Below are positions 14,601 through 54,015 of a DNA stretch of 64,000 nucleotides, piece by piece. The notes beneath the pieces are model-generated. The model searched no databases. It saw only the letters and a program-made list of their open reading frames with translations, and was not told where the DNA came from. A program made the position numbers and the translations under genes. Position 1 is the stretch's first letter, and every line of letters begins with the position of its first letter. Location of the stretch: the IMG/VR virus record IMGVR_UViG_3300030098_004828, positions 62,001-126,000 of that record. One strand, given 5' to 3'.

Positions 14601-17600
14601 AGAACAAGTAGCAGATAGAATAAACTTTTCTATGAGAAGAGTTTGGAATACTATGCGTGATAAAAATCATCAAATAAAAGAAATAGATAAGTATATTAGA
14701 GAGACAGAAAGAATGGCTGTATTACAAAAGCTTTCAGAAGAAGATATATATCCACATCCAATTCAAACAATGATATACTTAGAGCAAGGTATAAAACCTA
14801 CTCTATTTTATAATAAGAAAGGTATTATAGATCAATTAAATCAACCAGAAGAACATAAAAAAATACTTAGTATTTTTAATTTAAGTGATGATACATCAGA
14901 AGATGGAAAAGATGCTAAAAAAGAAAATGCAGAAGAAATAGAAAAACAAGCTAAAGAAAGTAAAGAAAAAGATGAGGTAGAAAAAGAAGAAACAGATTTA
15001 ACAGTGGGTGGAACAGGGGAAGTTCCTGATGAAAAAAAGAAAGAAAAAGAAGAAGAAGTAGAGTATGAAGTTCCAAAAAATACTGATAGTGATAGTACTA
15101 TAGTAGATTTAGTACCAAAAAATAATGATAAACCTCCAGCATCTTTAGGTAAAGTGTTAAGTTCTGTAAACAATGATACAAAAATTCAAAATGTTCTTAA
15201 TAATAAATATGAACAATGGGCAGCTAATCAAGCACTAGAAGATCCTAATAGAAGTATAATGACTCAAGAATTATGGGAACAAGATGAAACATTAGGAGGT
15301 GCAATAAAATCTGCAAGAAAAGAACTTTTTAAATTATATGCTAAAAAGGTAAGTCTTAAAGATAGACAATCAACTCCTTTTGATACTTGGTTAAAATCTA
15401 ATGCCGCAAATTTAGAAGTTGATGATATTATTGAAAAATATCCTTTAGCTACTAGCAGTGTGCAAGATATTATGATAGGTGATGTTACAGCAGTACAACC
15501 TATGCCTGAAGAAAAATTAAATCCTAGTTTAGAATCTATAGTATCTGATGGTAAAAAAGATAAAACAGGAATATGGATTCTTAAATCATCAATAGAATTA
15601 GATCCTGATGCAGATCCTAAAGAACTTTATACAGTTACTGATAATAATAAAATTGATTTGTCTGAGAAGTTTTTTCATTTAGATCCTGCATCTTTAGATC
15701 CAGATGGTTATGATACATTAGATGAAGCACAAAGAGCTAAAGATAAAATACTTAAATGGTTAGGTAAACCAGAAGATAGAGATTTTGTTTTTGATGGAAT
15801 ACAGTTTAGAAGAGGAATGAGTATTGTTAAAGGAGAAGATCTTAATGATTGGAAAAATGCTGAACAAGAAGATAAAGGAAATTATGAATGGACAGTAATG
15901 GCCAATAAAAAAACTGTAGAAAATAATAATAATGTATGGATTCAAAAAAAGGTTGGAAATACTATAGAAAAAGGAGACAAGCCTATAGTATTAGAAGAAG
16001 GTGATTGGGCAGCTGATGGATGGGTTATTGAGTTTGATGCAAAAGAATTATCACAAAAAGAAAAACAAAAAACAAAAACTAAATTACAAAAGACAGAACC
16101 TTTACAATTTTTTGCTATTACAGAAAGTAAAGGTGAAACCACTTATACTAAAATAAAAAGACACGAGAAGCTTTTAAAATCAATGACTCCTGAAAAACAA
16201 AAGAATCTTGTATTACGTATAATGAGAATGGAAGACTTTGAAGAAAAAATGAAGATTCCAGTAAAAAAATTAACACCTTTAGAATTTGAAACTAAGCAGC
16301 CAAATAAGAGAATTAGAAAAGGATATGTTAAACATAGAGTCTTTTTAGAATATGATGGTTATGATATTGCAGAACTTCAAGGTATACATTCTTCAGTAAT
16401 ACTAGATGAAAACAATAAGGAATTAAATCCTATGACAATGTCTAACAAACAAATCCTTGAAACATTTGTTATGGGTGAGCATGATAAAGCTAGAGGTGTA
16501 ACAGAACAAGAATTTGCAGATACTGTTAGAAATAACTATAAGCAAGGATATCTTATAATGAAAAAGATAGATGAATATATGGGAGAAAACTTAGCAACTG
16601 AGATTCCTTTCTATATAGAGGGTAAAAAGAATCCTGTCTTAGAAGATATAGGTATTACTATACAAGCTGGTAATATAGCATATTCAACTTCAGTAGCTAA
16701 TAGAAGTACATTTGATCAATTAGAATATAAATCTGCAGATAGTAAAATAAATAAAGATGGTTCTAAAGGTAGTCAAGTTATTTATAGTTTATATAAAGAT
16801 AAAAATGGAGATTGGAGAGAAGCTCCTTTTGATAATTTTGATCAAGCTACTACAGAGAATGAAGATTATAGAGATTCACAATTAGAATTAATTGAGAATG
16901 ATAGAAAGATGGTAGATTTAGATATTAAGTCTTTAGGAAGATATGTAATGGTTATTAGAGATGATAGAGGGGTTTATACTTATGCAGCTTTACAACCTAG
17001 AGAAAAAACTTCTGTAGAGTTAGAAGAAATGTTTACTCAATTAAAAGAAAGACATATAGAAACTTTAAAAGAAAACTATGTATCTGTAGAGGGAACAAAT
17101 AAAAGAATGATTAAAAAGGGTAAAAAATATACAGATCAAGGTTTTGGAATGCAATACAATAATGAATTTAATTCAAACTTTTCAGAGACCCATTTCATTG
17201 CTAGTAAAACAAAAGGAGATGTTATTGTACTAGGAGTAGATCCTTATGGAAATATTAATCTAGAGTATTTTAATAGGATAACAAAGCATGAAACACGTGT
17301 GTCACTTAATGAAGAAGAAGTGGCCACTGCATCAAACTTTTTAGAATTATTAAATTTACTTAATGAAAAATGGAAAAAAACAGAATGGGCTAAAGCTTAT
17401 AAAAAAGTAGAGGGAACAAAAAAAGCAGTTAAAGATGTTAATAGACCTAACTTTAAAATACAACCTATAGACTTTAGAATTTCATTACCAAGAACTATAA
17501 CTACAGAACAATTATCAGATGTTAAAATATTAATACAACCTGAAATAAGAAAAAATATACGTACAGTATTAAGTTATACAAAACAATCTGAAATAGATAT

Positions 17601-20600
17601 GCTAACTGCAAATGCAAGTTCTATACAATATAGACATTCATTTCTTAAAACGTCTTCAGAAAAGAAAATAGAATCAGATGAAAGAGAGGCAATAAATGAA
17701 CCAGAAGCTAATAAGATAGGAACTACAGACAGTGTAACTACAATGTTTACCAATTATCTAAAAAACGGTAAAGCTTCAAATGAATTATTAGATTCTTTAT
17801 CAGATGCTTTAGTTGCAGCTCAACAAGACATGTCTGTTTATGCAGCACAAGCTCTTGATATAGTTAAGAAAGCAGGACTAACACACCATGATGTTAAAAA
17901 TGCTCTTGATTTTGTTTACTCTTTTAAATTTGATAGTGATTTTGTTAATCCTATTACACAAAAAGTAATAGGAACAAAACAAGATCTAATGGAATATGTT
18001 CATACAATAGCATTAGGAAAGAAAAAAGTTACTGAATATACTCAAGAAGAATTAGATAATATGGATTCTGTATTTGAAAGTATAGATAATTTACACGATG
18101 TTGTACAAGCTGTAAATAAACCTATACTTCAAAGAGCTAATCAACTTTTAAAAGATGACAACTATAAGGTAGAGCTTCAAGCTATGGTTGATAATAAACT
18201 TTACAAATCTATGCCGGGTGGAACTAGTACACAAAAAGCTAAACAGAAAGGTCCTGCTGTAAGTATAGTTAATAAAGAAAAACAATTTAATTTAAAAGCA
18301 TATCAAAAAGCTCAAGAAGAACTTGAACAGTTAAATAATGCTTTAGAAGATGCAGCTTTTGATGAGGCAGTAGTACGTCAAGAATATATTAATTTAAAAA
18401 CTAATAAAGCTAAAAATGACTTTATACAAACATTAGAAGATACAGGTGATTTTAGAATTTTAGAAAATAAAAATAAATGGAATAGAAGAAATGTACTTTT
18501 AGAATTAATGAATCAATATGAAGCTGATATTAAAGGTATAGATCCTAATTTAGCAGGAAAATTTTTACCAGAAGTATTAAAATCTATAGATGAACATGAT
18601 ATAGCTAGACGTCAAGAGTTTATTGAATTTATGAGAGAGAATCTTCCACAATTTATGGTGGATAGAATAGATAATTTAGAATGGAATTCTGAAAAAATGG
18701 GAGCTTTGATGGGAGCTTTTGTAATAGATTTAAAATCAGTTGGTCAAGGTTTAACATTAGATAATCTAGTTGGTAAAGTTTATTTGAGCAAAACTTCTAA
18801 ATTTGATTATCATGAGGCAGGTCATGCTACTATGAGAATGCTTATGACAGATGAAGAAATTGCTACATGGATGGCAACTGCTAGAAAAAATGTTAGAGCA
18901 CAAATGAGATCTAAAGAGGGTTACAAAATAGGTGAAAATGCTGATGGTAGTTCTATAATAGTTAAAAATGTAAAACAAGCTTTAGAGCATTTAAGATTAC
19001 AGTCCTATATGTATTCTCAAATGTCTGATAATCTATTAGAGAAAAGACTTTATGAAGAAGATATCTGGGATAATTTTCAATTATATAAAGAGAATCCTAA
19101 AAATAAAAAAGTAAGAAAAGAATATAAAGGATTCTTTAGCTGGTTAGTTGAAATGATTAAAAAAGTATTTAAGTTTTTTACAACTAGTTATTGGAATAGT
19201 ACAAGGTCAAGTGGATTGGGAGGTCCTTATGATTCTTTATTTGAAAAAATAGATAATGGAAAATATAGAACAAGAGCTATTCAAAAAAATCAATTTACAG
19301 AAGGATTTTTAGAAGGAGGTTTATCTTTTAAATATGCTTTAAAACCTATTCCTACAGGAAGACCTAAAGTATTAGCAACAAGTAAATTAATTGAAGGGCA
19401 AGAGCAAGAAGTTCTTAAACAAGTTACAGAGTATTTTCCGCCAGAAGAGGAAGCAAGATATGTAGCTAATATAGTTAAGATATATTTAGAGCTGTTAGAT
19501 AAGATGGAGGGTAAATACATACCCAATAAAGTTCTATTAGATGCTGTTAATATTGTTACAGAGAGTCTTAATCCTAAAAGACAAATATTCCAAGATATGG
19601 ATCCTGGTGATTATAGAAAAATAAAATCACAATTAAAAAAAGACTATGCAGCATTAAGTAGTCCAGAAGCAAAAAGAGCTTTAATGAAATCTGCAAGAGT
19701 TGCTTTAACTAGACATGATCAATTTCAAGATGCATTTGATGAAATGATAATGGATAAAGATCATGAATTAGAAGGAAGAACTAATGAAACAAGTTGGGAC
19801 GAACAGTTACAAGAAATAGGACCAGAAAAAACAGCTTCAAGATTTGTAAGAGATCTTATTGCCACAACAGTTCTTACTGATCAAGCAGGACAACCTTTAG
19901 GAGATAAAAAATATGGTTTTAAATGGTTAGATGATGCTAAAACAATACCTGCTGTTCAACCTGTAGATTATATGAAAGCTTTTAATGCACTTCTTTTAGC
20001 AGGAGAAGGTATTGAAAATCATTATGAAAGATTTAGAACTATATGGAATCAAACTCACTATAAGCCTGATCTTAAAGCAGTTATGGTAAATATACTTAAT
20101 TTATTGGGTGTAAAACCTGCCCAATTAAGAGGTAACAGTTGGATGCAAAATGTAGAAAAAAATGGGACTGCAAAACAACAATGGTATTTGGGTAGAATAA
20201 TTAAAGCTTTTGATACAGTAAGAGTTGATTATTATAATTTAATTCAAAGTGATTCAGGAAATACAAAAGGTTATGTCAATATAATTAATGCAGCTCATAA
20301 AGATGATGCATCTAATCAATTAAGAAGTGCAACTAATGTATATTTAGGTCTTGATTCAAAATGGCAAGGAGAAGGAAAAGAATCAAGAAAACTTCACAGG
20401 CGTGCAACAGGTGTTTTAAATGATTGGAATAATATATTGTCTGAAGGAAAACCTATGACTGATGCAAAATTAGCAAGAAAGTCTAAAGAAATAAGTACAA
20501 GACTAAGAGAAAGATTGGGTATTGAACTTCATCCTGCAACTATAGAAAATAGTATAATTAATTTTATAGAACTTAGTACTGAATATCAAAAACAATTATT

Positions 20601-23600
20601 CAAACAACAAAATAAATTACAAGATTCTAAACAATTTAAATGGCAAAAAGATGATGTCTTTTTCTCATTAGAAACTATTTCTACTTTAAGAGATGCTAAT
20701 GTTCCTCATCAATATCTTAGTTTATTAGCTCATAGTCAATATCTTGAGTTTGATGAAATGAGTGATAAAGAATTTAAATCTGTAATGAATGAAAGAGAAT
20801 CAGGTGCTTTAGGTAGATGGAGAAGAATTTTTAGAATTAATGCTTTATATGATCCTAATGTTGGTCATACTGTATTTAGAGATATGAAAGGTAATTGGAT
20901 ATATGCACATCAAATTCCTACATATACTATAAGAGCAATGCAGAAATGGAATGATTTAAATCATCTTGATAACTTAAAAGCAAAAAATTGGTTTAATAAA
21001 AATCATAGTTATTTTTTACAGTCTCCAGATTTTAGAGCGATGAGTAAAAAAGGTATGCATAGAACAACTAGACTTTTAGGAGGAAAGATGACTTCTATGA
21101 AAGTTAAAGATAATAAGTTAATAGAAATGAGAATGAAAGATGAAGCTCCTGCAAAAGGTGTTTCAACAGGTGAAATGTCTCCTGCTCAAATATATTCTTC
21201 ATTAGCTAATATGATGTTGAAATTCTATAATGCTGAAAATCAAGAAGTTACTACTGTAGTAGACGAAGATAGAAACGGTTATGAATTTGCCTTAATGACA
21301 AGTCTTTTAAGAACTAGATCAACATCTAATACATTTGATTTTGGAGATTTTCCTGTGTTAGATGCTGTAATTAAAAATAAATCAGGACAAAGTATTATAA
21401 ATCCTGAGTTTGTTGAAATGGTTATAAGATGGATGATTCAACCTCAATATGAAAGAATAAGATTAGAGAATGCAAGATTTAATAATGTTAATGAAGGTAT
21501 TCCATTAACAAAAGAAATAATAATAAACTATAATGATTTTGCAGATCCTACAAGTGATCTTACTTCTATATATCTTCAAACTGATTTATTAGATATTGTA
21601 AATATAGCAAGTGGTATAAAGAAAATAAAATTACCAAAATTTGTTACAGAAGCTGAAACAAAAGATATACTTAGTGGAAAGCAAACAGCATTCTTAAGAA
21701 CAGCTGAAGGACAAGGTAAGATAGGTTTATTTGGTGAAGGGAAAAGAGCTGTTGTAGAAAGTGAAGAGGGTACATTTGTTCTTACTTATCATGGTTTTAA
21801 AAACTCAGATGCTTTTGATGATATAAATGAAATAAAAGAAATGTTTGGTGCTAGAATTTTAGATAAGAAAACTCTTACTCATACTGAAGCTATAAAAGTT
21901 GGTAATGAGTTTTGGTGGACAGATATGAAAGTAATTAAAAATTTCTTTAGTCAGAATCAAGCTAAAAAAGAATCATACAAAAGACATTTATATACTATAA
22001 AACCTTTAGATGCATATACAGGAATGTCAGGAAGTTTGGCAGAAGAACTTTTACAAAGACAAGCTTTAGAGGTAAATAAATGGTTTGGAAGTCATAAAGA
22101 TGAAAATTTTGCAGAAAAAGTTGCAGAAGAAGATGTTGTAGTTGTATTTGGTGCAAATAGCCTAGGACTTCATGGAAGAGGAGGTGCTGGATTTGCAATG
22201 GGAAAACAAAGAAGTTTAAAACAAATAGAAGAAGTAGAAGATGGTACTGTAGGAGATTATGCAATTAAAGGTAAGACAGGTATTATGCAAGGATCTAAAG
22301 GTCTTGGATATGGATTAATTACTGTTTCTGGAAAGCCAAAAGGAAGATATGGTGGAGCAAGCATGACAACAATAGAAATAGTAAATGAAATAAAAAATTT
22401 ATATTCTTTAGCTGAAAATAATCCTGAAACAACATTTAAAGTTCTTTATGAATTAGAAGAAAATGAAAAGAGTTTAAATGGATATACAGGTCAAGAATTA
22501 GCAGATATGTTTGTATCGGCAGGTGCTATTCCAGAAAATATACAATTTAATGAAACGTTTGCTGACTTATTATATGTATCAAAAGATACAGGATCAAGAA
22601 GCAGATTAATGGCAGATGTTAATACTAAACTTACTGAAGATGCACAAACATTAGCACAAGATGGTGTGACATTCAAAAAATTTAGAGAAGAATTTCAAGG
22701 ACCTAATGGTGAATCATTAGTTGAAATTGTTACAAATAGATTACAGGCAGATTTTGATGCTTGGCATATTTCTTTAAGAGACACAGGTGCATTAGATTTA
22801 ATTAATCCTATGCTTAAAAAAGATGGATTAACAAGTAATTCAGGTAAGAAAAATAAGAAAACTAAATTAGCAAATAAATCTTTAGGTTTAATACCAGGTA
22901 ATGCTACACATAACTTAATGCAAATATTTCTTAATGATTATTTTAATACAAAAGCAGCAATGGCTTTATTATTTGGAGATGAAGCAAAAGTTTTAGGAGG
23001 TTCTCAAGATAAAACTAAAAGAGGCCCTGCTCTTAATTATGGAGGAGATAATGTATCTTCACAAGTTGCTTCTCCAGAAAATGGAATTCCTACTCCTGTT
23101 AATAAATTTAAAATTTGGGTTTATGATGATACTGTAGCACAAGATATGTTTATGGGAACTGAGATAAAAACAAATGACGCTTATGTTCTTGCAACTACTT
23201 TTGGACGTAGAGCTATAGCATGGGGATTAGGTATAGGGCAATTAGCAATGTATCCTATGATAGATGAGATTGAATCTAATCAAGAAGGTGGTATGTCTGC
23301 CACAAGATATTTAGGCAATAAAGAAACTGGAGAAGAAGGTTATAAAAAGTTTGGAGCAAATTTAGCATCATTAAAACTTGCTTATATGGATGGGAGCAGT
23401 ATGCTTAAAATGACTGTAGGATCTGCTACTCCTGAAATGATTAGTCATTATGATGGTACACCTATGGAATCATCCATACCATTGTGGAATATGATGGAAA
23501 AAATGAGACAATGGGAATCTAAAAATCCAGGTCAATTTGTATTAGCGGTTCCAAGATCTGCAGCTAAAATGTTAAAAGTAAATCCAGCAAATATTAATGA

Positions 23601-26600
23601 TGCATTTGGTGAACCTAATCAATTTCCTATAAGTGAACAAAGTTTAACTGAAGCAACTGCTGAAAATCTTTATCTACAAGTTGTAAATCCAACAAATAAA
23701 ATGGAAGGTCCTGATCCAAGACAAAAGAAAACAGGTATAACACAAGAACAAGATTTTGTTAATATACATGGAGAAGATATAGAAATTCCTGGATGGGAAG
23801 TTATTAAGGATGGTAAAAAACAACCTATTACAATTAAAGAAGTAAAAGAATTTTATAAGGATAATACCAAAGCACGTGTAACCTTACAGTTTACAGGAAG
23901 AAGAAATTTAATGTTTGACTTAGGAACAGGTAGAGATAAAAATATAATTGAAACAGATATTGATCCTATAAATATAACAGTAAATTGGCGTGCTTTCTTA
24001 GAGTATGCACGTACTTCATTGATGTCTGGTAAAACTCCAGAACAATTTTTAGAATTTTTTGAAACAACTATAAGAGGTCAAAATGCATATGAGTTAAATA
24101 ATCCTTTAACACTTCCTAAATTTGATGAATTGTTTAGAAGCTTCTTTGCTAAAGGAGTATTAGGTGAAAGAGTTCCTGGTCATGGTTTAACTCTTATAGG
24201 AAATGGTAGAAAAGTTGTAAAGCAAGTAGTTGCTCTTGATAAAAATGATCAACCTGTTCACGGTAAGTCTAGAGTTATTAGAGATAAACATTGGAAACTA
24301 CTATATAAAAAAGGAGAAAAAATAGCAGTAGCAGGTATGAATTATGCTAGAGAAAATAAAGTAATAGATGGTAAAAGTGTTTTTGTTGGTGAATTTGATG
24401 GGTTAAAGGTTGGTGATTATTATATAGATGTGTTAAGAACAGACGTTCCTCAGTATATAAAACATAACTCTAATGGTGAATTTATTTCAGATCATAATAA
24501 GTGGGAATTAAGTGGTGAAGTTAGAACAGAAATTATGGTTCCTTTTCATAATCCACATGCTGAAACCATACCTATAGATCAAGAAATTCCAGAGTCTCTT
24601 TCTACAATGTATATGACACGTATTCCTACAGATGATAAAAAATCTCAAGATGTAGGTAAAGTTGTTAATGAACTTCCTGTATATATGGGATCTGTAGTTA
24701 TGGCATCAAATGAGCATATATTTAGATCAGGTGCCGATATGGATAATGATAAAGATTATACTCAAATTTTTGATACATATGTAGATGACAAAGGTGTTAT
24801 ACAAATTTATGGAGATCAATTTCATAGTAAAAAAAGAAAGAGTATAGATAAAAAATATGAAGAATATATTAGAAAAGTTGTAAGTGAAGCAAAGAAAAAG
24901 AATTCTAATATGAGTTATGCTGTTAAAGTATTTAAAGAAAGACTTTCTCAATTTAAACAAGAATCAGGTGTAATATTAAAAACATCAGAAAAATTAGAAC
25001 AAGAATTTGTAGAATGGCTTTCTAATCTTGATAAAGATAGAAAAGTAAAAGGTAAAAGTTTATTTGCTCAACAGCTTTATAATGCAATGAAAAGATTAGA
25101 TGGGGATAATTTAGATATGCTATCAGCAAAACTTAGATTTGCGTCTATGAGAGGATATGAATATGATATAGTTACTGGTAAATTTATAGATTTATTTGAA
25201 GAAGACATACATATTGATAGTGACTCAAGATATAGTGTTATACAAAAGTTTTATAATAATAATAAAATCCTACAAGGTGCTATGACTTTATTGGGTTTAC
25301 CTTTAACAATGGAACAGTTTATTGAATTTGAACTTAATCATGGATCTCCTAATTTAGGAGCATTAAATAATAATATTTTACAAGCTTCTATAGCTCTTTT
25401 ACAACATGAAGGAATGCGTAAATCACAAGAAAATGGTTTACCAGGAATTAAAAATGAACCTACAACAACTAGTCCTTATGATACAGCTTGGAAATATTAT
25501 GAAGATAATTTGCCAGGTTTATTTAAAAGAAGAGATACATCTAATATTAATGTAGATAATATGGATGGAAAAAGTAAAGCTTTTATGACTAATAAAATTG
25601 CAGAAAAAAATGTTGGAGCTGTTGTAACTCCAAAACAAATATTAGATTTATTAGGAGAACATAATGTTGAATTATTTGTAGAAGATTGGCAAGGAAAACC
25701 TTTACCATATATATCTTTTCAAGGTCATACTTTTAATAAACTTAATACTCAGTATATTATAAGAAATGGTAAGGAAGATAAAATAGATGGTGTTAGAACT
25801 GGAACAAATCTAGCTGCAATGATAAATGCAATGACGGATAATGGAACTCATATGCATGCAGGTAAATTTAATATAACTGCTAATCAAGCAGCATTACAAA
25901 CTTTACAAGCTAAGTTAGGAATGGATATGACTACAATACTTACACTTAGTGATAATCCTATACTTGAAAAATATATTATAATGGGAGCTTTCAAACAACC
26001 TGGTGAACCAGGAACAAGAAAATTAGTGGAAGGTCATATGAGTAATTTAGTTAAGAAGTATGGACAAGATATGTTAGATATAGTTGCTGTAACTGTATTA
26101 GATCAGGAAATAATTAATTCACATATTAATAGTCATCCGGATAATAATCCTGCTGAATATGGTTTTGAAATTATTGATCCTTCTAAAAGCTATGGAGAAC
26201 TATTTAAAAAAGATCCTCAATTAGCTTTAACAAGAGCTGCAGAAGAATATTTAATTCTTCAACTTTGGTTAAATACAAATAGAGTTTCAGACAGTGTATC
26301 TAGAACTCAAAAACCATTAAGACTTCTTAAAGGTCCAGGTAGAAATAGTGAAGAAACTTCTTTTATAATGGAAAATATAAAAGAAATGGGTCTAGATCTA
26401 GATACTTCTAAAAAAGGAAATGATAAGTTTAATAAATTAATAGATCCTATAGATAATATGGCATTACCTTTTGATGCTAGAAAAGCTTTTAGAGATTCTA
26501 TTATGAAAACATATTTAGATATATTCTTTCAAATGGAAAAAAGTTTAGCACCTGCTCTTTTAATAACAGAAACTCCATTCTTTAAAAAAGCTACTGATAT

Positions 26601-29049
26601 AATATTAACTCAACTTAAAAATAAAGCAAAGACGAATGAAAGAAAACATAAGATTAAAAAAGATATATTAAGCTATCTTACAGCACGTGCAGTTAGACAA
26701 CATTATTTAAATAATGGAATGATAAAAGAAGCTCAAGATATGACTAATGGAACATTATATGAAACTTTAAAAATATCTGAAACTCAATTAACAGCATCAG
26801 AAGCTTTAGCAAAACTTAGTGAGTATTATAATGGACAAGAAGAATATAACTTTTTTGCTCAAGGTTTTTTAAGTAGTATTGGTGAAAGATCTCCTATGAA
26901 TGCTTCAGGTATGAGTAAAGTCACATCTAATACTTGGACAAAATTAGAAGATAAGACAGTTAGACATATAAGATCTGCATTTATGAAAGCTTATGATAAT
27001 CCAGTTACACATGATTGGATAATGACTTTGTTACATTATGAACTTGTTAAGAATGGGCTTCAATATACTGCTGATACTTTTATTACTGCAATTCCACCAC
27101 AAGCTTTAGAAGAAGTAATTTCAACAATTACTCCTGTACATAATTTCTTTAAACAACTTCAGTTGTCTGATACAAGAGCAGAAAATTTATTAGGAATGAC
27201 TGTACACCAACTATTACAAGATATGACTCTTGGTTATTTAGGAGCAGAAAAAAACAATAGTATACTTAAAGAGTTGTATGGAAAACCTGTAACAGATTTA
27301 GGATCTCCAGATATGGTTGATGTATATGATGATCAAATAACAGAAGAAATGGCAGATGCAAATCCTAATATATTATTTGTATATGAAGATGTACTTAGAG
27401 GTGGAAAACCTTTAAATGCAAGAATAAGATCTAAAGAAAATGTAATGGGTCTTAGAATGAGAAAGCATTATAAAAAAGATGAAAAAAGTCCTTTCTTAGA
27501 TGCTAATGAACAAACATTAATGAAAGATAATTTTGATAAAGATTTAGCTGCTATTAGAGAATTAATGAATGAAACAAAAGAAGATGGATCACCTCTCTAT
27601 GAAAGTATAGTATTCCCAAGTTTTTATTTAATGGGAGATGTGTATTTAGAAAAACAAGAAGTTCAAGAAGAAACAGAAGAAAAAGAAAAGAAGAAAAAAG
27701 AAAAAGCTCCATATAAAGGTAAGTCAGAGAAGGTTTATAAACATATGCGTGAACAAATAAAAAAACAATTTGGTTTTAATATACAATCAGGTAGAGTTGC
27801 TGCCTCTGAAAGTATTAAAGCTAAACGAGCTAAACAATTAAAAGAAGCTGCAATAGCAAAATATCCTAATGAAGGTCTTCTTGTTTTAAGTATGAAAAGT
27901 GGATTAATTCCTGCACAAGATATTAGATCATTAAAAAGAAAAGCAAAAGGAAAAGGTAATAAGAAAGAGGAAAAGAAATTTAAAGCAATGTTGGGTGAAG
28001 CTGTTAAAAAGAATAAAGAACAATGGAAAACTAATTTAACAACATTAAGAGAGGGTGGTGTTAGGATAATAGAAATAGAAGATCCGAATGATGCAAATGC
28101 AACAATCTTAGTTATGGAAGCTCCTCTTTATTATAGAGAATTGGAATATACCTATACAAAAGATGCTAACACAGGTAAGAAGGTTAGAAATCTTTCAGGT
28201 ATTACAACTTATAGATTATTGCAATTTAATGATCCTACAAGACAAGAAGAAGAAATAGAAAACTTTTTTGAATTTGATGCTAGATTAGAAAAGAAAGGTA
28301 TAACAACTCCAAATATTGTCTATGCTACAGAAGCAATATATGAAGCTGTTAAAACTACATTTTCAAATTTACAAAACCCAATGGTAGGAAACGCTTTATT
28401 ATTACCTACTCAAGAGCCTATATACTATGAAACAATAAGAGAAAGACAAGAAGAAATTAAAGAAAGATATGATAGTTTGTTTAATAAAAAGAAAGGTTTT
28501 ATGGGTATTGATATATCAGCACAAGTAGCTAATTTACTTGCAAGTAGAATGGCAGCTATAACTGGAGGAAAAAAACCAGATATTAATAAAGTTCTTACAT
28601 CATCATTACCTCAATCAGCTTTTAAAAATGAAGTAAAAGATGTTCAATACACACAAGAAATAAAAGCTACAAATGAATCTGTAGAAGTAGGTGGTAAAGA
28701 AATTACAAGTCAAACTCCTGCAGAAAAATTATTAATGATGATGGCAAAAGGAGCTATAAAACAACAAGAAATTAAAAAACAATTGCCAAGCTCTACTAAA
28801 AAAAGTGTTACTAAAAAAATTGATCAATCAACTCCTGAAACAAGTAAATATGAAGGAAGATTAAGAGGTATTTGGAAGAGTTTAAGTCAAGATAAAAAAG
28901 AAGCAATTGCTAATGTTTTTGGAGAAGGAGATATAGCAATGACTGAAGTTAGTGAGCAAGAGTTTGTAAATTATTATTTTAGATATAAAAAGTATAACCC
29001 AACCTTTACGTTAAAGGAATTCATTAAAAAAATCAATGAGTGTTACTAG
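11674..29049 (+). CDS. Giant virion-associated RNA polymerase polyprotein (5791 aa)
   Basis: YMTRIPT (about 24610-24630) followed about 35 aa later by GADMDNDK (24730-24753), matching the R.P...DxDxD two-barrel RNAP catalytic loop (DFDID in crAss-like virion RNAPs). Also HEAGH zincin motif, two macro-like segments and N-terminal hydrophobic stretches. Confidence 0.85.
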   Translation: MAEETQIIPEGSGKTGNVFEEGLNVNSTPNDANLDLTSSSVVDNLPYDNTPLHTPGWKNISDVVAEQGEYFAGPPGMNIDPSIWADVGRMDKMLAEHGLGNNNNFYNPLPGQSAGSFNPFAESSGILDPNTLEGRRAKLTQVINNAQQNTPGRNPAYRDPIYYGAKAFNLDRYTSHPAFDRLGFHPFADNDAYYNANSSKWENFQRTWGAFGSMFHEAFTSPWRSIGDFLEGDWNRADYIGASAMEDAMRIGRSTKGGVGGFFNDLFLNFSYTLGIISNVVLEEMALAGITYLSGGTAAPAAGARTVYNVGRIMRTGDKINDARKASQRTLEAMKNYNNVNNFWKFTRGVGRWTMPQTAQFYRRLRTAGSTVDNMNNLGKLRLGAGALYRDLRMANLAWSEAKMEAGLVEMQLRNKKYQEYRRANNGAHPDEEWLNALNVDALNAAQTTIFWNAPFIHLTNQFVFPGLGRGFRGVGRQFDDSLDAVPDAIQRELKKQKPSGMPGKFYDAGKGVSRIKSEGLKGGLTKGANYALRYFGANVGEGAQELYQEAVAVGVEHYYGSLFDMRLSTGLDLQRADMELSAQQGSKLFWDSFQEGANSQMGWNGFKVFMSGFMMGGLARMVQTPVLDWAPNYVNKKWNQAKYDKYEKQKEKFKANALEYLENGRKDPLHVFDKTKINVLNQREANQQMYAASFSGQAMEHYDAKDWAKFEHFETYVSMGKTHHFIDIIDDYLALDNKSFREAFPVETYPDSVAKIRSRLEQNKKEINEMKRKYEERKELYSNPFSEDRFEEGTVLYQQEKLRRLSYDHARKLAMYVDSSFERAVERINNMYKALSSGDLKVLKNIQANELDPLMGKRQLEAELELLNVELTGTLSQKDIKFKTKKKELLTEFSNIIHNPKYQTPKTKVFSKTHMPKLRKAFTDYLNFLAKAKNEFVESKNIDKALNAIVDTQWLEKRSGDLHDAARILMNPKKLEQVADRINFSMRRVWNTMRDKNHQIKEIDKYIRETERMAVLQKLSEEDIYPHPIQTMIYLEQGIKPTLFYNKKGIIDQLNQPEEHKKILSIFNLSDDTSEDGKDAKKENAEEIEKQAKESKEKDEVEKEETDLTVGGTGEVPDEKKKEKEEEVEYEVPKNTDSDSTIVDLVPKNNDKPPASLGKVLSSVNNDTKIQNVLNNKYEQWAANQALEDPNRSIMTQELWEQDETLGGAIKSARKELFKLYAKKVSLKDRQSTPFDTWLKSNAANLEVDDIIEKYPLATSSVQDIMIGDVTAVQPMPEEKLNPSLESIVSDGKKDKTGIWILKSSIELDPDADPKELYTVTDNNKIDLSEKFFHLDPASLDPDGYDTLDEAQRAKDKILKWLGKPEDRDFVFDGIQFRRGMSIVKGEDLNDWKNAEQEDKGNYEWTVMANKKTVENNNNVWIQKKVGNTIEKGDKPIVLEEGDWAADGWVIEFDAKELSQKEKQKTKTKLQKTEPLQFFAITESKGETTYTKIKRHEKLLKSMTPEKQKNLVLRIMRMEDFEEKMKIPVKKLTPLEFETKQPNKRIRKGYVKHRVFLEYDGYDIAELQGIHSSVILDENNKELNPMTMSNKQILETFVMGEHDKARGVTEQEFADTVRNNYKQGYLIMKKIDEYMGENLATEIPFYIEGKKNPVLEDIGITIQAGNIAYSTSVANRSTFDQLEYKSADSKINKDGSKGSQVIYSLYKDKNGDWREAPFDNFDQATTENEDYRDSQLELIENDRKMVDLDIKSLGRYVMVIRDDRGVYTYAALQPREKTSVELEEMFTQLKERHIETLKENYVSVEGTNKRMIKKGKKYTDQGFGMQYNNEFNSNFSETHFIASKTKGDVIVLGVDPYGNINLEYFNRITKHETRVSLNEEEVATASNFLELLNLLNEKWKKTEWAKAYKKVEGTKKAVKDVNRPNFKIQPIDFRISLPRTITTEQLSDVKILIQPEIRKNIRTVLSYTKQSEIDMLTANASSIQYRHSFLKTSSEKKIESDEREAINEPEANKIGTTDSVTTMFTNYLKNGKASNELLDSLSDALVAAQQDMSVYAAQALDIVKKAGLTHHDVKNALDFVYSFKFDSDFVNPITQKVIGTKQDLMEYVHTIALGKKKVTEYTQEELDNMDSVFESIDNLHDVVQAVNKPILQRANQLLKDDNYKVELQAMVDNKLYKSMPGGTSTQKAKQKGPAVSIVNKEKQFNLKAYQKAQEELEQLNNALEDAAFDEAVVRQEYINLKTNKAKNDFIQTLEDTGDFRILENKNKWNRRNVLLELMNQYEADIKGIDPNLAGKFLPEVLKSIDEHDIARRQEFIEFMRENLPQFMVDRIDNLEWNSEKMGALMGAFVIDLKSVGQGLTLDNLVGKVYLSKTSKFDYHEAGHATMRMLMTDEEIATWMATARKNVRAQMRSKEGYKIGENADGSSIIVKNVKQALEHLRLQSYMYSQMSDNLLEKRLYEEDIWDNFQLYKENPKNKKVRKEYKGFFSWLVEMIKKVFKFFTTSYWNSTRSSGLGGPYDSLFEKIDNGKYRTRAIQKNQFTEGFLEGGLSFKYALKPIPTGRPKVLATSKLIEGQEQEVLKQVTEYFPPEEEARYVANIVKIYLELLDKMEGKYIPNKVLLDAVNIVTESLNPKRQIFQDMDPGDYRKIKSQLKKDYAALSSPEAKRALMKSARVALTRHDQFQDAFDEMIMDKDHELEGRTNETSWDEQLQEIGPEKTASRFVRDLIATTVLTDQAGQPLGDKKYGFKWLDDAKTIPAVQPVDYMKAFNALLLAGEGIENHYERFRTIWNQTHYKPDLKAVMVNILNLLGVKPAQLRGNSWMQNVEKNGTAKQQWYLGRIIKAFDTVRVDYYNLIQSDSGNTKGYVNIINAAHKDDASNQLRSATNVYLGLDSKWQGEGKESRKLHRRATGVLNDWNNILSEGKPMTDAKLARKSKEISTRLRERLGIELHPATIENSIINFIELSTEYQKQLFKQQNKLQDSKQFKWQKDDVFFSLETISTLRDANVPHQYLSLLAHSQYLEFDEMSDKEFKSVMNERESGALGRWRRIFRINALYDPNVGHTVFRDMKGNWIYAHQIPTYTIRAMQKWNDLNHLDNLKAKNWFNKNHSYFLQSPDFRAMSKKGMHRTTRLLGGKMTSMKVKDNKLIEMRMKDEAPAKGVSTGEMSPAQIYSSLANMMLKFYNAENQEVTTVVDEDRNGYEFALMTSLLRTRSTSNTFDFGDFPVLDAVIKNKSGQSIINPEFVEMVIRWMIQPQYERIRLENARFNNVNEGIPLTKEIIINYNDFADPTSDLTSIYLQTDLLDIVNIASGIKKIKLPKFVTEAETKDILSGKQTAFLRTAEGQGKIGLFGEGKRAVVESEEGTFVLTYHGFKNSDAFDDINEIKEMFGARILDKKTLTHTEAIKVGNEFWWTDMKVIKNFFSQNQAKKESYKRHLYTIKPLDAYTGMSGSLAEELLQRQALEVNKWFGSHKDENFAEKVAEEDVVVVFGANSLGLHGRGGAGFAMGKQRSLKQIEEVEDGTVGDYAIKGKTGIMQGSKGLGYGLITVSGKPKGRYGGASMTTIEIVNEIKNLYSLAENNPETTFKVLYELEENEKSLNGYTGQELADMFVSAGAIPENIQFNETFADLLYVSKDTGSRSRLMADVNTKLTEDAQTLAQDGVTFKKFREEFQGPNGESLVEIVTNRLQADFDAWHISLRDTGALDLINPMLKKDGLTSNSGKKNKKTKLANKSLGLIPGNATHNLMQIFLNDYFNTKAAMALLFGDEAKVLGGSQDKTKRGPALNYGGDNVSSQVASPENGIPTPVNKFKIWVYDDTVAQDMFMGTEIKTNDAYVLATTFGRRAIAWGLGIGQLAMYPMIDEIESNQEGGMSATRYLGNKETGEEGYKKFGANLASLKLAYMDGSSMLKMTVGSATPEMISHYDGTPMESSIPLWNMMEKMRQWESKNPGQFVLAVPRSAAKMLKVNPANINDAFGEPNQFPISEQSLTEATAENLYLQVVNPTNKMEGPDPRQKKTGITQEQDFVNIHGEDIEIPGWEVIKDGKKQPITIKEVKEFYKDNTKARVTLQFTGRRNLMFDLGTGRDKNIIETDIDPINITVNWRAFLEYARTSLMSGKTPEQFLEFFETTIRGQNAYELNNPLTLPKFDELFRSFFAKGVLGERVPGHGLTLIGNGRKVVKQVVALDKNDQPVHGKSRVIRDKHWKLLYKKGEKIAVAGMNYARENKVIDGKSVFVGEFDGLKVGDYYIDVLRTDVPQYIKHNSNGEFISDHNKWELSGEVRTEIMVPFHNPHAETIPIDQEIPESLSTMYMTRIPTDDKKSQDVGKVVNELPVYMGSVVMASNEHIFRSGADMDNDKDYTQIFDTYVDDKGVIQIYGDQFHSKKRKSIDKKYEEYIRKVVSEAKKKNSNMSYAVKVFKERLSQFKQESGVILKTSEKLEQEFVEWLSNLDKDRKVKGKSLFAQQLYNAMKRLDGDNLDMLSAKLRFASMRGYEYDIVTGKFIDLFEEDIHIDSDSRYSVIQKFYNNNKILQGAMTLLGLPLTMEQFIEFELNHGSPNLGALNNNILQASIALLQHEGMRKSQENGLPGIKNEPTTTSPYDTAWKYYEDNLPGLFKRRDTSNINVDNMDGKSKAFMTNKIAEKNVGAVVTPKQILDLLGEHNVELFVEDWQGKPLPYISFQGHTFNKLNTQYIIRNGKEDKIDGVRTGTNLAAMINAMTDNGTHMHAGKFNITANQAALQTLQAKLGMDMTTILTLSDNPILEKYIIMGAFKQPGEPGTRKLVEGHMSNLVKKYGQDMLDIVAVTVLDQEIINSHINSHPDNNPAEYGFEIIDPSKSYGELFKKDPQLALTRAAEEYLILQLWLNTNRVSDSVSRTQKPLRLLKGPGRNSEETSFIMENIKEMGLDLDTSKKGNDKFNKLIDPIDNMALPFDARKAFRDSIMKTYLDIFFQMEKSLAPALLITETPFFKKATDIILTQLKNKAKTNERKHKIKKDILSYLTARAVRQHYLNNGMIKEAQDMTNGTLYETLKISETQLTASEALAKLSEYYNGQEEYNFFAQGFLSSIGERSPMNASGMSKVTSNTWTKLEDKTVRHIRSAFMKAYDNPVTHDWIMTLLHYELVKNGLQYTADTFITAIPPQALEEVISTITPVHNFFKQLQLSDTRAENLLGMTVHQLLQDMTLGYLGAEKNNSILKELYGKPVTDLGSPDMVDVYDDQITEEMADANPNILFVYEDVLRGGKPLNARIRSKENVMGLRMRKHYKKDEKSPFLDANEQTLMKDNFDKDLAAIRELMNETKEDGSPLYESIVFPSFYLMGDVYLEKQEVQEETEEKEKKKKEKAPYKGKSEKVYKHMREQIKKQFGFNIQSGRVAASESIKAKRAKQLKEAAIAKYPNEGLLVLSMKSGLIPAQDIRSLKRKAKGKGNKKEEKKFKAMLGEAVKKNKEQWKTNLTTLREGGVRIIEIEDPNDANATILVMEAPLYYRELEYTYTKDANTGKKVRNLSGITTYRLLQFNDPTRQEEEIENFFEFDARLEKKGITTPNIVYATEAIYEAVKTTFSNLQNPMVGNALLLPTQEPIYYETIRERQEEIKERYDSLFNKKKGFMGIDISAQVANLLASRMAAITGGKKPDINKVLTSSLPQSAFKNEVKDVQYTQEIKATNESVEVGGKEITSQTPAEKLLMMMAKGAIKQQEIKKQLPSSTKKSVTKKIDQSTPETSKYEGRLRGIWKSLSQDKKEAIANVFGEGDIAMTEVSEQEFVNYYFRYKKYNPTFTLKEFIKKINECY
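24610..24753 (+). other. RNA polymerase catalytic motif region (RIP...GADMDND)
   Basis: Asp triad D4355/D4357/D4359 with the conserved upstream Arg-x-Pro. Confidence 0.85.
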
Positions 29050-37021: not shown

Positions 37022-37142
37022 AAGGACAATGCTTACAACCATTCCCGCAGCAATATCCTCTTTTAAGATGATATGCTGCAGTCATGACTGTATTACCGTC
37101 TCTATCTTTATAGAAATATGGAGTAAATTTACTTAACTTCAC
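36981..37142 (-). CDS. Small Cys-rich DUF5522-like protein (53 aa), not in ORF track
   Basis: GTG start overlapping the last RNR codons. Translation MKLSKFTPYFYKDRDGNTVMTAAYHLKRGYCCGNGCKHCPF...; HLKRGYCCGNGCKHCP matches the DUF5522 signature as I recall it. Confidence 0.75.
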   Translation of the reverse strand: MKLSKFTPYFYKDRDGNTVMTAAYHLKRGYCCGNGCKHCPFKQKERPDQHQQT

Positions 37143-53998: not shown

Positions 53999-54015
53999 AT
54001 TATTAAATTTTATGT

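What the first reader, a model, noticed from the sequence alone, without database searches (positions are those of the whole stretch)
22125..22570. Macro-domain-like insert immediately upstream of the RNAP core
Seen: VVVVFGANSLGLHGRGGAGFA...GLGYGLITV...IVNEIKNLYSLAENNPETTFKV...GYTGQELADMF...IPENIQF. This parallels the macrodomain ADP-ribose loop (N..l.hGgGvA) and the phage FVFGSN..G.HG.GAA family. Inference: an ADP-ribose binder or hydrolase delivered with the RNAP, possibly countering ADP-ribosylating defences (DarT-type on DNA, or protein/RNA ARTs).
Basis: partly seen in the sequence, partly recalled or inferred. Interest (0 to 1): 0.62.

Follow-up and report, generated by a model that had tools for sequence, protein, structure and literature searches.

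The report
Macro-fold module inside a virion RNA polymerase
A 150-residue domain with the fold of ADP-ribose-handling "macro" domains has been inserted into the giant RNA polymerase polyprotein that a 246-kb phage probably carries in its virion, so it likely enters the cell with the DNA, though what it acts on has not been tested.

Summary
Window 22123-22575 (+) encodes residues 3484-3634 of one uninterrupted 5791-aa ORF (11674-29049).

**Family.** The segment matches NCBIfam NF049995 (A1S_2505 phage family, E 1e-10) and phrog_2072 (E 1e-12). It does not match Pfam Macro. An exhaustive search found 506 relatives.

**Fold.** An AlphaFold model built on 81 relatives is confident (pLDDT 92.7). 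Its best matches in the PDB are almost all macrodomains (Z 8-9.6), including DarG, TARG1 and viral nsP3 macros.

**Insert.** The domain is a true insertion. 19 of 21 collinear giant homologues lack it, and the other two carry it elsewhere.

**Polymerase.** About 145 residues downstream begins a two-barrel polymerase core. It matches the virion RNA polymerase of crAss-like phage phi14:2 (Z 15.6) and keeps the DxDxD metal motif.

**Wider pattern.**
- 28 of 61 large proteins with this domain also carry that polymerase motif, against 0.1 expected by chance. The domain's position varies widely among them.
- In smaller proteins it is fused to NADAR, DUF4326 and YpsA-type SLOG domains, the known phage ADP-ribose-processing set.

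**Verdict.** This is most likely an ADP-ribose-derivative binding or erasing module delivered with the polymerase. Substrate and catalysis are inferred. The MacroD-type catalytic Asp appears to be replaced by an invariant Ala. It is a new member of a known kind, of moderate interest.

The parts
11674..29049 (+). Single 5791-aa ORF (P0002), a giant multi-module protein that hosts the domain
   Evidence: Open frame. It is collinear with 21 metagenomic homologues of 4500-5500 aa.
22123..22575 (+). Macro-fold domain of the A1S_2505 / phrog_2072 family (residues 3484-3634), the finding itself
   Evidence: HMM boundaries. NF049995 E 1e-10 and phrog_2072 E 1e-12. AF2 pLDDT 92.7. Macrodomains top the fold searches.
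22147..22191 (+). FGANSLGLHGRGGAG (residues 3492-3506): the end of the first core strand with near-invariant Asn, then a Gly-rich loop with His that leads into helix 1. This is the position of the macro 'NAAN..GGG' ADP-ribose loop.
   Evidence: In alignment A1, F15 and A28 are invariant and G16, N18, G21, G24 and G26 are at least 90% conserved. Model secondary structure is E11-18 followed by H26-32. The only hhalign register puts VFVFGSN..G.HG.G on VIVNAAN.SLGGGGV, but this is not significant.
22474..22491 (+). LNGYTG (residues 3601-3606): a conserved loop between a strand and a helix, at the position of the macro second phosphate loop (S-T-G-[IV]-Y-G)
   Evidence: L124 and G126 are at least 90% conserved and the consensus is LNGYTG. 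The model has E110-113, a loop, then H129-138. The equivalence to macro loop 2 is inferred from topology, not from a superposition.
22051..22824 (+). Variable linker between two blocks conserved in homologues. It is about 258 aa here and about 103 aa in P0154; the difference is the inserted domain.
   Evidence: BLASTP block coordinates.
23008..24807 (+). Two-double-psi-beta-barrel catalytic core of a crAss-type DNA-dependent RNA polymerase (residues 3779-4378)
   Evidence: The AF2 model of residues 3740-4445 has low confidence (pLDDT 58). Even so, Foldseek's top hit is 6vr4_A at E 3.7e-9 with the next hit at E 0.2. VIA-align gives Z 15.6, rmsd 3.9 over 290 aa, aligned to gp66 891-1479, followed by RDR2 and QDE-1 at Z 6.4-6.8.
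24736..24750 (+). DxDxD metal-binding motif (D-M-D-N-D, residues 4355-4359), within SGADMDNDK
   Evidence: All 21 homologues have [ST]GADFD[IV]D in the aligned position. Upstream lies R-I-P-[ST]-x-D-K, a beta-prime-like barrel signature (the comparison with beta-prime rests on my own knowledge).
18811..18825 (+). HEAGH (residues 2380-2384), a probable zincin-like HExxH peptidase motif in the upstream conserved block
   Evidence: It is the only HExxH in the protein and is conserved as [YF]HE[AVS]xH in all 21 homologues. There is no Pfam hit, so its function is inferred.
27325..27576 (+). DUF7831 (PF25176) domain near the C-terminus (residues 5218-5301), a second small accessory module that may be distantly related to the first
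   Evidence: 27.7 bits against a cut-off of 27, and 25.7 bits when scanned as a segment. Evidence for a relation to the A1 family is weak: hhalign probability 24% over 29 columns, 2 of 81 A1 members hit DUF7831 at E about 0.009, and language-model features score 0.91.

Best explanation
The segment is a folded accessory domain of about 150 residues with the Macro fold. It belongs to the phage family catalogued as A1S_2505 / phrog_2072, and it has been inserted into a linker of a giant polyprotein just upstream of a crAss-type two-barrel RNA polymerase core.

Shown here: the fold, the family membership, the insertion, the polymerase identity of the neighbouring block, and the recurrent but position-independent fusion of this domain to polymerase-bearing giant proteins.

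Inferred:
1. The polyprotein is virion cargo and is ejected into the host with or before the DNA, as for the RNA polymerase proteins of phi14:2 and PhicrAss001.
2. The cleft formed by the conserved Asn, the Gly/His-rich loop and the LNGYTG loop binds an ADP-ribose-type ligand, as the equivalent loops do in macrodomains.
3. The module erases or degrades an ADP-ribose-derived product of host immunity at time zero. Candidates are adducts on the incoming DNA or on nascent RNA, or soluble NAD-derived signals or toxins.

Because only a few copies per virion would be delivered, an enzyme or a cis-acting protector of the polymerase and its template is more plausible than a stoichiometric sponge. The chemistry probably differs from MacroD-type enzymes.
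For: - **Fold.** The AF2 model has pLDDT 92.7. Foldseek against the PDB puts macrodomains at the top (YmdB, macroH2A, PARP14, VEEV, DarG, TARG1; probability 0.96-1.0). An exhaustive VIA-align search of 48,161 chains gives macro-fold proteins for nearly all 47 hits from Z 9.6 down to 5.7, with DarG at 8.9, and the ThsA SLOG domain at only 6.1. In BFVD, after family members the next hits are alphavirus and coronavirus macros and phage 'Macro domain-containing proteins'.
- **Conservation.** Conserved residues concentrate in the two loops that correspond by topology to the macro ADP-ribose loops. The window's copy keeps all of them.
- **Context.** Among 70 mid-sized family members, fusions are to NADAR (9), DUF4326 (4), cpYpsA (4), YAcAr (2) and YpsA (2). 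Examples are domain+NADAR in P0116 and P0151, and domain+DUF4326+YAcAr in P0069. This is the architecture set described for phage ADP-ribose processing (Macro/NADAR/SLOG/DUF4326) in PMC9503650, section 3.7.4. Phage NADARs are experimentally DNA ADP-ribosylglycohydrolases that counter DarTG1 (PMC11825919).
- **Association with the polymerase.** 28 of 61 family-bearing proteins of at least 1000 aa carry [AGS]D[FY]D[IV]D, against a shuffle mean of 0.11. The domain lies upstream in 15 and downstream in 13, at -2052 to +1568 residues.
- **Insertion.**
- **Polymerase identity.**
- **Virion cargo precedent.** The RNA polymerase-associated proteins of PhicrAss001 were detected in virions by mass spectrometry (PMC10172136).
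Against: - There is no sequence-level link to Macro. Pfam Macro gives no hit at E<=1, and the family profile against PDB sequences gives nothing.
- hhalign against a narrow YmdB profile gives probability 0.6%.
- In that register the MacroD/YmdB catalytic Asp aligns with an invariant Ala.
- The adenine-contacting Asp of the 'GDIT' strand is not conserved in the family (the Y-x-G-x-I position is variable).
- Z of 8-9.6 is only moderately above the background the tool quotes for unmatched models (7-8).
- No residue-level structural superposition with an ADP-ribose complex could be made here.
- Virion packaging of this particular protein is not shown, nor is it shown that this 246-kb phage is a crassvirus.
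- No ART, NADAR or canonical Macro was found elsewhere in the genome to suggest a specific pathway. The ART control did not ring, so that absence is uninformative.
Confidence: 0.6

Rival explanations
1. It is a Macro-fold enzyme or binder for a ligand that is not ADP-ribose-derived, such as another nucleotide, an RNA end or a cofactor. The domain would serve the polymerase directly, for instance in RNA 5'-end or template processing, rather than counter-defence.
For: The MacroD catalytic Asp and the adenine-contacting Asp are not conserved. There is no sequence match to Macro. The Macro fold also occurs without ADP-ribose chemistry, as in the leucine aminopeptidase N-domains at Z 6.3-7.5. The domain is tightly associated with RNA polymerase giants.
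Against: Every identified fusion partner outside the giants belongs to the NAD/ADP-ribose processing set (PMC9503650). The variable position relative to the polymerase core, and its absence from 19 of 21 close polymerase homologues, argue against an integral polymerase function.
Confidence: 0.17
2. It is a non-catalytic sensor or adaptor. The domain would bind an ADP-ribose-type signal, or a host or virion protein, and regulate ejection, refolding or activity of the polyprotein.
For: Some macrodomains are readers rather than enzymes (macroH2A is among the top hits; PMC9503650 section 3.4.1). The classical catalytic Asp is absent.
Against: A strictly conserved polar set (Asn, His, Thr, Asn-Gly-Tyr-Thr) persists across about 500 relatives, including stand-alone proteins of about 150 aa and fusions to enzymes. 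This fits catalysis better. Position independence within the giants argues against a fixed allosteric role.
Confidence: 0.12
3. It is a SLOG/LOG-type Rossmannoid nucleotide N-glycosidase rather than a Macro domain.
For: It has a glycine-rich loop after the first strand. It co-occurs with YpsA-type SLOG domains. ThsA SLOG appears in the fold list at Z 6.1.
Against: Seventeen chains score Z>=8 and all are Macro-fold (sixteen natural macrodomains or macrodomain-fusion chains plus one designed protein that Foldseek groups with them), while the best SLOG hit is 6.1. Foldseek probability is 0.96-1.0 for macros. No Pfam SLOG family hits the domain itself. Where SLOG domains occur they are separate neighbours in the same protein.
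Confidence: 0.04
4. It is a decayed or merely structural filler with no ligand function in this particular protein.
For: It scores 41.8 bits, below the NCBIfam cut-off of 45. Ser is replaced by Ala in G-S-N and there is a roughly 25-residue hairpin insertion relative to many members.
Against: All invariant and near-invariant family positions are retained. The G-A-N variant and the hairpin are shared by a whole subgroup, including stand-alone proteins. The model is very confident and the frame is intact.
Confidence: 0.05

Closest known systems
A1S_2505 family phage non-structural protein (NCBIfam NF049995) / PHROG 2072
   Same: There is a direct profile match over the whole NF049995 model (E 1e-10) and to phrog_2072 (E 1e-12). 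The motifs are the same: VFVFGSN..G.HG.GAA, SYAL.T, LNGYTG and IP.N..F.
   Different: The window's copy is embedded in a 5791-aa protein instead of standing alone. It scores just under the curated cut-off (41.8 against 45 bits) and carries a hairpin insertion. Both libraries list the family without a known function.
Macrodomains (Pfam Macro PF01661 and clan; e.g. DarG, TARG1, YmdB/MacroD, alphavirus and coronavirus nsP3 macro)
   Same: The fold is the same three-layer alpha/beta/alpha arrangement (Z 8-9.6, 122-135 aligned residues, rmsd 3.3-3.9). There is an Asn at the end of the core strand followed by a Gly-rich loop, and a second Gly-containing loop before a helix at the equivalent topological positions. 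It is deployed by viruses inside polyproteins next to a polymerase, as in RNA viruses (PMC9503650).
   Different: Sequence similarity is not detectable. The MacroD catalytic Asp position is an invariant Ala, and there is a conserved His in loop 1 instead. The adenine-binding Asp is not conserved. No biochemical data exist.
Phage ADP-ribose-processing multidomain proteins (Macro/NADAR/SLOG/DUF4326 combinations; Iyer et al. 2022, PMC9503650) and anti-DarT factors (AdfN NADAR, PMC11825919; chimallivirus DarG2-like antitoxin, PMC13309987)
   Same: The family occupies the same architectures: fused to NADAR, DUF4326 and YpsA-type SLOG domains. It is predicted to be deployed early or packaged in the virion.
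   Different: In the window the domain is fused to none of these partners but to an RNA polymerase polyprotein. No NADAR or canonical Macro was found elsewhere in the genome. The substrate is unknown.
Polyvalent virion proteins with N4-like RNA polymerase plus zincin peptidase and ART modules (Iyer et al. 2017, PMC5512222)
   Same: It is a giant, multi-module protein that presumably is injected. It combines an RNA polymerase, a conserved HExxH motif and small conflict-type modules.
   Different: The polymerase is the crAss/phi14:2 two-barrel type, not the N4 single-subunit type. No ART was detected. The accessory module is a putative eraser or reader rather than a writer of ADP-ribose.
Virion-packaged RNA polymerase gp66 of crAss-like phage phi14:2 (PDB 6vr4)
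   Same: The neighbouring block matches gp66 891-1479 (Z 15.6) and has a DxDxD motif.
   Different: gp66 is 2166 residues long, whereas this ORF is 5791 aa with extra modules. The metal motif here reads ADMDND rather than the ADFD[IV]D of all 21 close homologues.

Membership tests
A1S_2505 / phrog_2072 phage family | Significant profile match over the whole family model | tested here: met
   NF049995 E 1e-10 covering profile positions 1-109 of 109. phrog_2072 E 9.7e-13. A profile of 81 members scores 169 bits on the window.
A1S_2505 / phrog_2072 phage family | Score above NCBIfam's curated cut-off (45 bits) | tested here: not met
   41.8 bits. The shortfall coincides with a subgroup-specific hairpin insertion.
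A1S_2505 / phrog_2072 phage family | Family-invariant residues present (F, G-x-N, G.HG.G-A, T, Y, LNG, P-x-N-x-x-F) | tested here: met
   In alignment A1, all invariant and >=90% conserved columns are retained by the window sequence.
Macro domain superfamily | Macro fold (three-layer alpha/beta/alpha with a six-stranded mixed sheet) | tested here: met
   Foldseek against the PDB puts macrodomains at the top, probability 0.96-1.0. The VIA-align wide search has 17 chains at Z>=8, all Macro-fold. The BFVD pattern is the same. Strand order was not checked explicitly.
Macro domain superfamily | Sequence-profile match to Pfam Macro or to a solved macrodomain | tested here: not met
   No Pfam hit at E<=1. 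The PDB profile search found nothing. hhalign against a YmdB profile gave probability 0.6%. The YmdB profile was shallow (>=67% identity), so this is a weak test.
Macro domain superfamily | Gly-rich (GxG) loop after the conserved core strand, lining the ligand cleft | tested here: inconclusive
   G21-x-H-G24-x-G26 follows strand E11-18 and precedes helix H26-32, and the register matches NAAN..GGGG in the only hhalign alignment. No superposition with a ligand complex could be made.
Macro domain superfamily | Binding of ADP-ribose or a derivative | not testable with these tools
   This needs ITC, DSF or a co-crystal. Only contextual support is available here.
MacroD/YmdB-type hydrolases | Catalytic Asp directly after the GGG loop (YmdB GGGGV-D-GAI) | tested here: inconclusive
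   In the N-to-N register the position is the family-invariant Ala28. The alignment is not statistically supported, so this leans 'not met'.
DarG/TARG1-type hydrolases | Catalytic Lys near the distal ribose | not tested
   A partly conserved Lys lies in the G-x-K-x-S segment after the T73 strand, but no residue-level structural alignment was available.
crAss-type (phi14:2 gp66-like) virion RNA polymerase (for the host ORF) | Two double-psi beta-barrel core with a DxDxD metal motif | tested here: met
   6vr4_A scores Foldseek E 3.7e-9 and VIA Z 15.6 over 290 residues, followed by the QDE-1 and RDR2 RNAi polymerases. The motif is at residues 4355-4359 and is conserved in 21 of 21 homologues. Model confidence is low (pLDDT 58).
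crAss-type (phi14:2 gp66-like) virion RNA polymerase (for the host ORF) | Packaged in the virion and ejected | not testable with these tools
   This rests on precedent only: the PhicrAss001 mass spectrometry (PMC10172136) and the title of entry 6vr4.
DUF7831 (PF25176), second module of the same ORF | Pfam match above the gathering score (27 bits) | tested here: met
   27.7 bits in the six-frame genome search. 25.7 and 23.2 bits when scanned as cut segments. This is borderline.

The most novel reading that the evidence does not exclude
This would be a distinct, uncharacterised catalytic clade of the Macro fold, with an invariant Asn plus loop His and no MacroD Asp. It would have been welded repeatedly, at changing positions, onto crAss-type virion RNA polymerases because it works in cis. 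As the first phage protein in the cell and tethered to the transcribing enzyme, it would strip ADP-ribose from the incoming template DNA or from nascent transcripts (DarT- or CmdT-type defences) where the polymerase meets them. That would be a 'self-cleaning' polymerase. The NADAR fusions of the same family would then be dual erasers covering different modified bases.
Probability: 0.2. Interest if true: 0.72.

Novelty: new member of a known kind. Interest (0 to 1): 0.45.

Why it matters
Giant crAss-type polymerase polyproteins are largely unannotated. Searches found no family for about 95% of this ORF.

This work shows that one recurrent module has the Macro fold, sits in the phage ADP-ribose-processing domain network, and is significantly but position-independently coupled to the polymerase. 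That gives a concrete, testable function to a family that NCBIfam and PHROGs list without one.

It also suggests that phages of this type deliver an ADP-ribose countermeasure before any phage gene is expressed. If confirmed, the set of virion-delivered anti-defence enzymes would extend to a widespread and abundant phage group, and a new biochemical clade of macrodomains would be defined. If the domain does not handle ADP-ribose, it would be a clear case where fold and context mislead.

Tried and rejected
- **Word-index protein search** with the 181-aa domain: no hit, a limit of the method.
- **Phage collection searches:** megablast of window 21000-24000 found nothing. tblastn of the polymerase region also found nothing.
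- **PDB sequence and profile searches:** residues 3400-5200, the domain profile and the polymerase-block profile gave only noise.
- **PHROG and Pfam scans** of the rest of the giant ORF: nothing except DUF7831.
- **BLASTP against the Kolpuevirus RNA polymerase protein:** only the small domain is shared (38% identity, E 6e-20). The rest is too diverged.
- **hhalign to a YmdB profile:** not significant. The profile was shallow because the word search returned only close YmdB relatives.
- **hhalign to the DUF7831-like module:** probability 24% over 29 columns, so paralogy of the two modules is left open.
- **Other ADP-ribose genes in this genome:** no canonical Macro, NADAR or ART-PolyVal was found. 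The ART control did not ring, so that absence carries no weight.
- **One protein-atlas call** failed on a length limit and was repeated correctly.
- **A first guess of ten fusion proteins** showed no NADAR. A second set did.
- **tRNA scan of the window:** none found.
- **SLOG fold and chance resemblance** were both considered and rejected.
- **Not used, because not needed:** read mapping, sequencing-run search, complex prediction and alternative genetic codes.
Full report
**1. What is at the coordinates**

The stretch is not a separate gene. It lies inside one 5791-aa open reading frame, window 11674-29049 +.

The window is bases 62001-126000 of a 245,646-bp virus record rated complete, with about 30% G+C. 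A profile built from relatives places the domain at residues 3484-3634, which is nt 22123-22575.

**2. Family**

- Pfam finds nothing, including no Macro.
- NCBIfam NF049995 ('A1S_2505 family phage non-structural protein', N-terminal domain) matches over its whole length. The match scores E 1e-10 and 41.8 bits, just under the 45-bit cut-off.
- PHROG 2072 (unknown function) matches at E 1e-12.
- The word-index search found nothing.
- The exhaustive HMMER search found 506 proteins at E<=1e-3 and 130 at E<=1e-10.
- Of the 150 best hits, 33 are under 250 aa and 61 are at least 1000 aa.
- An alignment of 81 domain segments gives the consensus VFVFGSNxxGxHGxGAA...SYALxT...LYxxAxxNPxKxFxVAY...LNGYTGxEMAxMF...IPxNVxF. 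The window's copy keeps every invariant or near-invariant position.

**3. Fold**

AlphaFold2 on this alignment gives a confident model, pLDDT 92.7 and pTM 0.87.

- Foldseek against the PDB returns macrodomains as the top hits: O. iheyensis MacroD, macroH2A, YmdB, PARP14, VEEV nsP3, TARG1 and DarG. E-values are about 1e-3 to 2e-2 with probability 0.96-1.0.
- A Foldseek-independent search of 48,161 chains gives 17 chains at Z>=8, all Macro-fold. Sixteen are natural macrodomains or fusion chains carrying one, and the top hit is a designed serine hydrolase that Foldseek ranks among the macrodomains. Examples are alphavirus P23 9.5, PARP9 9.5, DarG 8.9 and TARG1 8.4, with 122-135 aligned residues at rmsd 3.3-3.9.
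- Almost all 47 hits down to Z 5.7 have the Macro fold (PARG, Poa1p, aminopeptidase N-domains). The best SLOG domain, ThsA, scores 6.1.
- In the viral model library, the hits after family members are alphavirus and coronavirus macros and phage 'Macro domain-containing proteins'.
- The ESM Atlas shape search returns only viral clusters, among them a NADAR-containing one.

The Macro fold is supported. Z of 8-9.6 is only moderately above the tool's stated background, so consistency across four searches carries the argument.

**4. Is it a Macro family member by sequence and active site?**

Not demonstrably. The family profile does not hit any PDB sequence. hhalign against a shallow YmdB profile gives probability 0.6%.

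It also fits the model's secondary structure, strand 11-18, loop, then helix 26-32. In that register:

- the conserved Asn corresponds to the ribose-contacting Asn of macrodomains;
- the Asp that follows the GGG loop in YmdB/MacroD enzymes is an invariant Ala here;
- a His that is conserved in most members sits inside the loop.

The Y-x-G-x-I strand before it aligns with 'GDIT', but the Asp position is variable. A second conserved loop, LNGYTG, lies between a strand and a helix where macrodomains have their second phosphate loop.

These equivalences are inferred from topology. I could not superpose coordinates.

**5. It is an insertion**

The word-index search with residues 3650-4650 found 21 homologues of 4519-5518 aa. 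BLASTP shows five collinear blocks.

- Around the domain, P0002 2308-3459 and 3718-4408 align with P0154 2126-3225 and 3329-3996.
- The window's protein therefore has about 155 extra residues in that linker.
- 19 of 21 homologues have no copy of the domain.
- Two (P0172, P0173) have it about 1050 residues downstream of the polymerase motif instead.

**6. The neighbour is a crAss-type RNA polymerase**

An alignment of residues 3740-4445 with 19 homologues shows invariant ...R-I-P-S-Q-D-K-H-S...S-G-A-D-F-D-I-D-K. By my own knowledge of multisubunit polymerases, this resembles the beta-prime barrel signature.

- The AF2 model is poor (pLDDT 58).
- Foldseek's top hit is nevertheless 6vr4_A, the virion-packaged RNA polymerase of crAss-like phage phi14:2, at E 3.7e-9. 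The next hit is at E 0.2.
- VIA-align gives Z 15.6 over 290 residues, mapping model 40-639 to gp66 891-1479.
- RDR2 and QDE-1, the RNAi polymerases of the same class, follow at Z 6.4-6.8.
- The window's metal motif is D-M-D-N-D at residues 4355-4359.

The macro-fold domain ends about 145 residues before the position equivalent to gp66 residue 891. gp66 has about 890 residues before that point, so the insert may lie within the polymerase module's N-terminal half rather than strictly outside it. This last point is inference.

**7. The association is recurrent and position-independent**

- Of 61 family-bearing proteins of at least 1000 aa among the best 150, 28 contain [AGS]D[FY]D[IV]D. Residue-shuffled sequences give a mean of 0.11 and a maximum of 1.
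- The domain lies upstream of the motif in 15 and downstream in 13, at distances from -2052 to +1568 residues.
- In annotated Crassvirales genomes the domain lies in the 'putative RNA polymerase' of Kolpuevirus 'frurule' and of cr112_1, and in giant proteins of cr116_1 and cr50_1. UniProt names the cr116_1 protein 'ART-PolyVal-like domain-containing'.
- A FastTree of the 81 domains is weakly resolved. It needs at least 4 and most parsimoniously 10 changes of the 'polymerase giant' label, with clustering stronger than in all 500 shuffles.
- The window's copy falls in a group of 17 in which the domain's position ranges from residue about 130 to about 6320.

Many metagenomic proteins are truncated, so these counts are lower bounds and positions are approximate.

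**8. Functional context outside the giants**

Scanning 70 family members of 230-1300 aa against Pfam gives NADAR in 9, DUF4326 in 4, cpYpsA in 4, YAcAr in 2, YpsA in 2, and DUF488-N3a, DUF7831 and YopX in one each. Nothing else reaches E<=1e-4.

| Protein | Architecture |
|---|---|
| P0116, P0151 | domain + NADAR |
| P0029 | domain + DUF4326 |
| P0069 | domain + DUF4326 + YAcAr |
| P0038, P0078 | domain + YpsA |

Iyer et al. describe this network for phage ADP-ribose processing. In their account SLOG, Macro and NADAR domains are combined in architectures, and DUF4326 is often fused to all three (PMC9503650, section 3.7.4). They propose a division of labour on soluble ADP-ribose derivatives. 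[quoted passage not shown]

Phage NADARs have since been shown to remove ADP-ribose from DNA and defeat DarTG1 (PMC11825919). This is independent support, by association, that the family handles an ADP-ribose-type substrate. It does not show which one.

**9. Mechanism proposed**

Shown:
- a Macro-fold module;
- its insertion into a linker;
- a crAss-type polymerase core next to it;
- recurrent coupling of the two;
- fusion partners drawn from ADP-ribose processing.

Inferred:
- The polyprotein is virion cargo, as in PhicrAss001. There the polymerase-associated proteins were found in virions, and about six copies each would fit in the capsid cargo zone (PMC10172136).
- The module therefore arrives before phage gene expression.
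- The conserved cleft binds an ADP-ribose derivative.
- The module hydrolyses or removes it.

The low delivered copy number favours catalysis or cis-protection over sequestration. Candidate substrates are DarT-type adducts on the entering DNA, ADP-ribosylated transcripts, and soluble NAD-derived signals or toxic metabolites. I cannot rank these on present evidence.

A single, strictly conserved HExxH motif about 1100 residues upstream suggests a zincin-like peptidase that might process the polyprotein. This would be analogous to N4-type polyvalent proteins (PMC5512222), but it is untested.

**10. Novelty and literature**

Full-text searches gave the following.
- A1S_2505: two unrelated papers.
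- DUF7831: none.
- crAss-like with macro domain: none.
- crAss-like, ART and polyvalent terms: nothing on this module.

The kind of thing is known: virion-delivered Macro-type modules in phages, and accessory conflict modules on virion polymerases. The specific points appear undescribed in the literature I could search. These are the assignment of this family to the Macro fold, its insertion here, and its significant coupling to crAss-type polymerases. I file it as a new member of a known kind.

**11. Limits**

- No ligand or activity data.
- No coordinate-level comparison.
- A low-confidence polymerase model.
- Packaging inferred by homology.
- The phage's taxonomy and host not determined.
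- No genetic code other than table 11 was needed, and no restricted material was met.

Noticed in passing
window 27325-27576 (+), same ORF, residues 5218-5301: This is a second small accessory module, Pfam DUF7831, with a borderline score (27.7 bits against a cut-off of 27). Its N-terminal motif (NILFVYED..GG) resembles the first strand and loop of the macro-fold family. Several giant homologues carry it at the same C-terminal place. Three weak hints suggest a distant relation: hhalign probability 24%, 2 of 81 cross-hits, and language-model features at 0.91.
   Followed up: partly
window 47268-47708 (+), 146-aa ORF: There is a weak DUF7831-like match (E 0.004, 14.7 bits) in a small separate ORF.
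   Followed up: no
window 18811-18825 (+), residues 2380-2384 of the giant ORF: This is the only HExxH motif in the protein (YHEAGH). It is conserved as [YF]HE[AVS]xH in all 21 giant homologues. It is likely a zincin-like metallopeptidase module, as in N4-type polyvalent proteins, but no Pfam or PHROG model detects it.
   Followed up: partly
window 29751-30785 (+), within ORF 29070-36851 (2593 aa): The next giant ORF carries a PolyA_pol head domain (E 7e-19) followed by an HD domain (E 1.5e-6). This is a CCA-adding-enzyme-like nucleotidyltransferase embedded in a presumably virion-associated giant protein, possibly for tRNA or RNA 3'-end repair.
   Followed up: no
window 81-36851 (+): Five tandem giant ORFs (1743, 875, 1216, 5791 and 2593 aa) fill 37 kb. 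Apart from the modules named in this report they match no Pfam or PHROG family.
   Followed up: partly
window 24736-24750 (+): The polymerase metal motif reads ADMDND here, whereas all 21 homologues have ADFD[IV]D. The three Asp residues are kept.
   Followed up: no
whole record (G000, 245,646 bp; window = 62001-126000): A phi14:2/crAss-type virion polymerase sits in a genome more than twice the size of PhicrAss001 (about 103 kb, PMC10172136). The capsid, portal and terminase genes and the host were not examined.
   Followed up: no
window 37129-38988 (-) and 52094-54040 (-): Ribonucleotide reductase (phrog_367, E 9e-135) and DNA polymerase (phrog_1252, E 1e-143) lie downstream. GC skew changes sign near 49-50 kb, where the coding strand switches.
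   Followed up: no
related proteins P0047 and P0070; P0089, P0092, P0120 and P0138: Two relatives (P0047, P0070) carry two tandem copies of the macro-fold domain. In the other four the domain is split by an insertion of about 100 residues between its two halves.
   Followed up: no
L002 (uncultured phage cr50_1, MT774375.1) and cr116_1: In cr50_1 the domain sits in a 4774-aa protein annotated 'DNA helicase'. In cr116_1 it sits in a giant protein that UniProt names 'ART-PolyVal-like domain-containing'. If the domain erases ADP-ribose as proposed here, cr116_1 would carry both an ADP-ribose writer and an eraser in its giant proteins.
   Followed up: no
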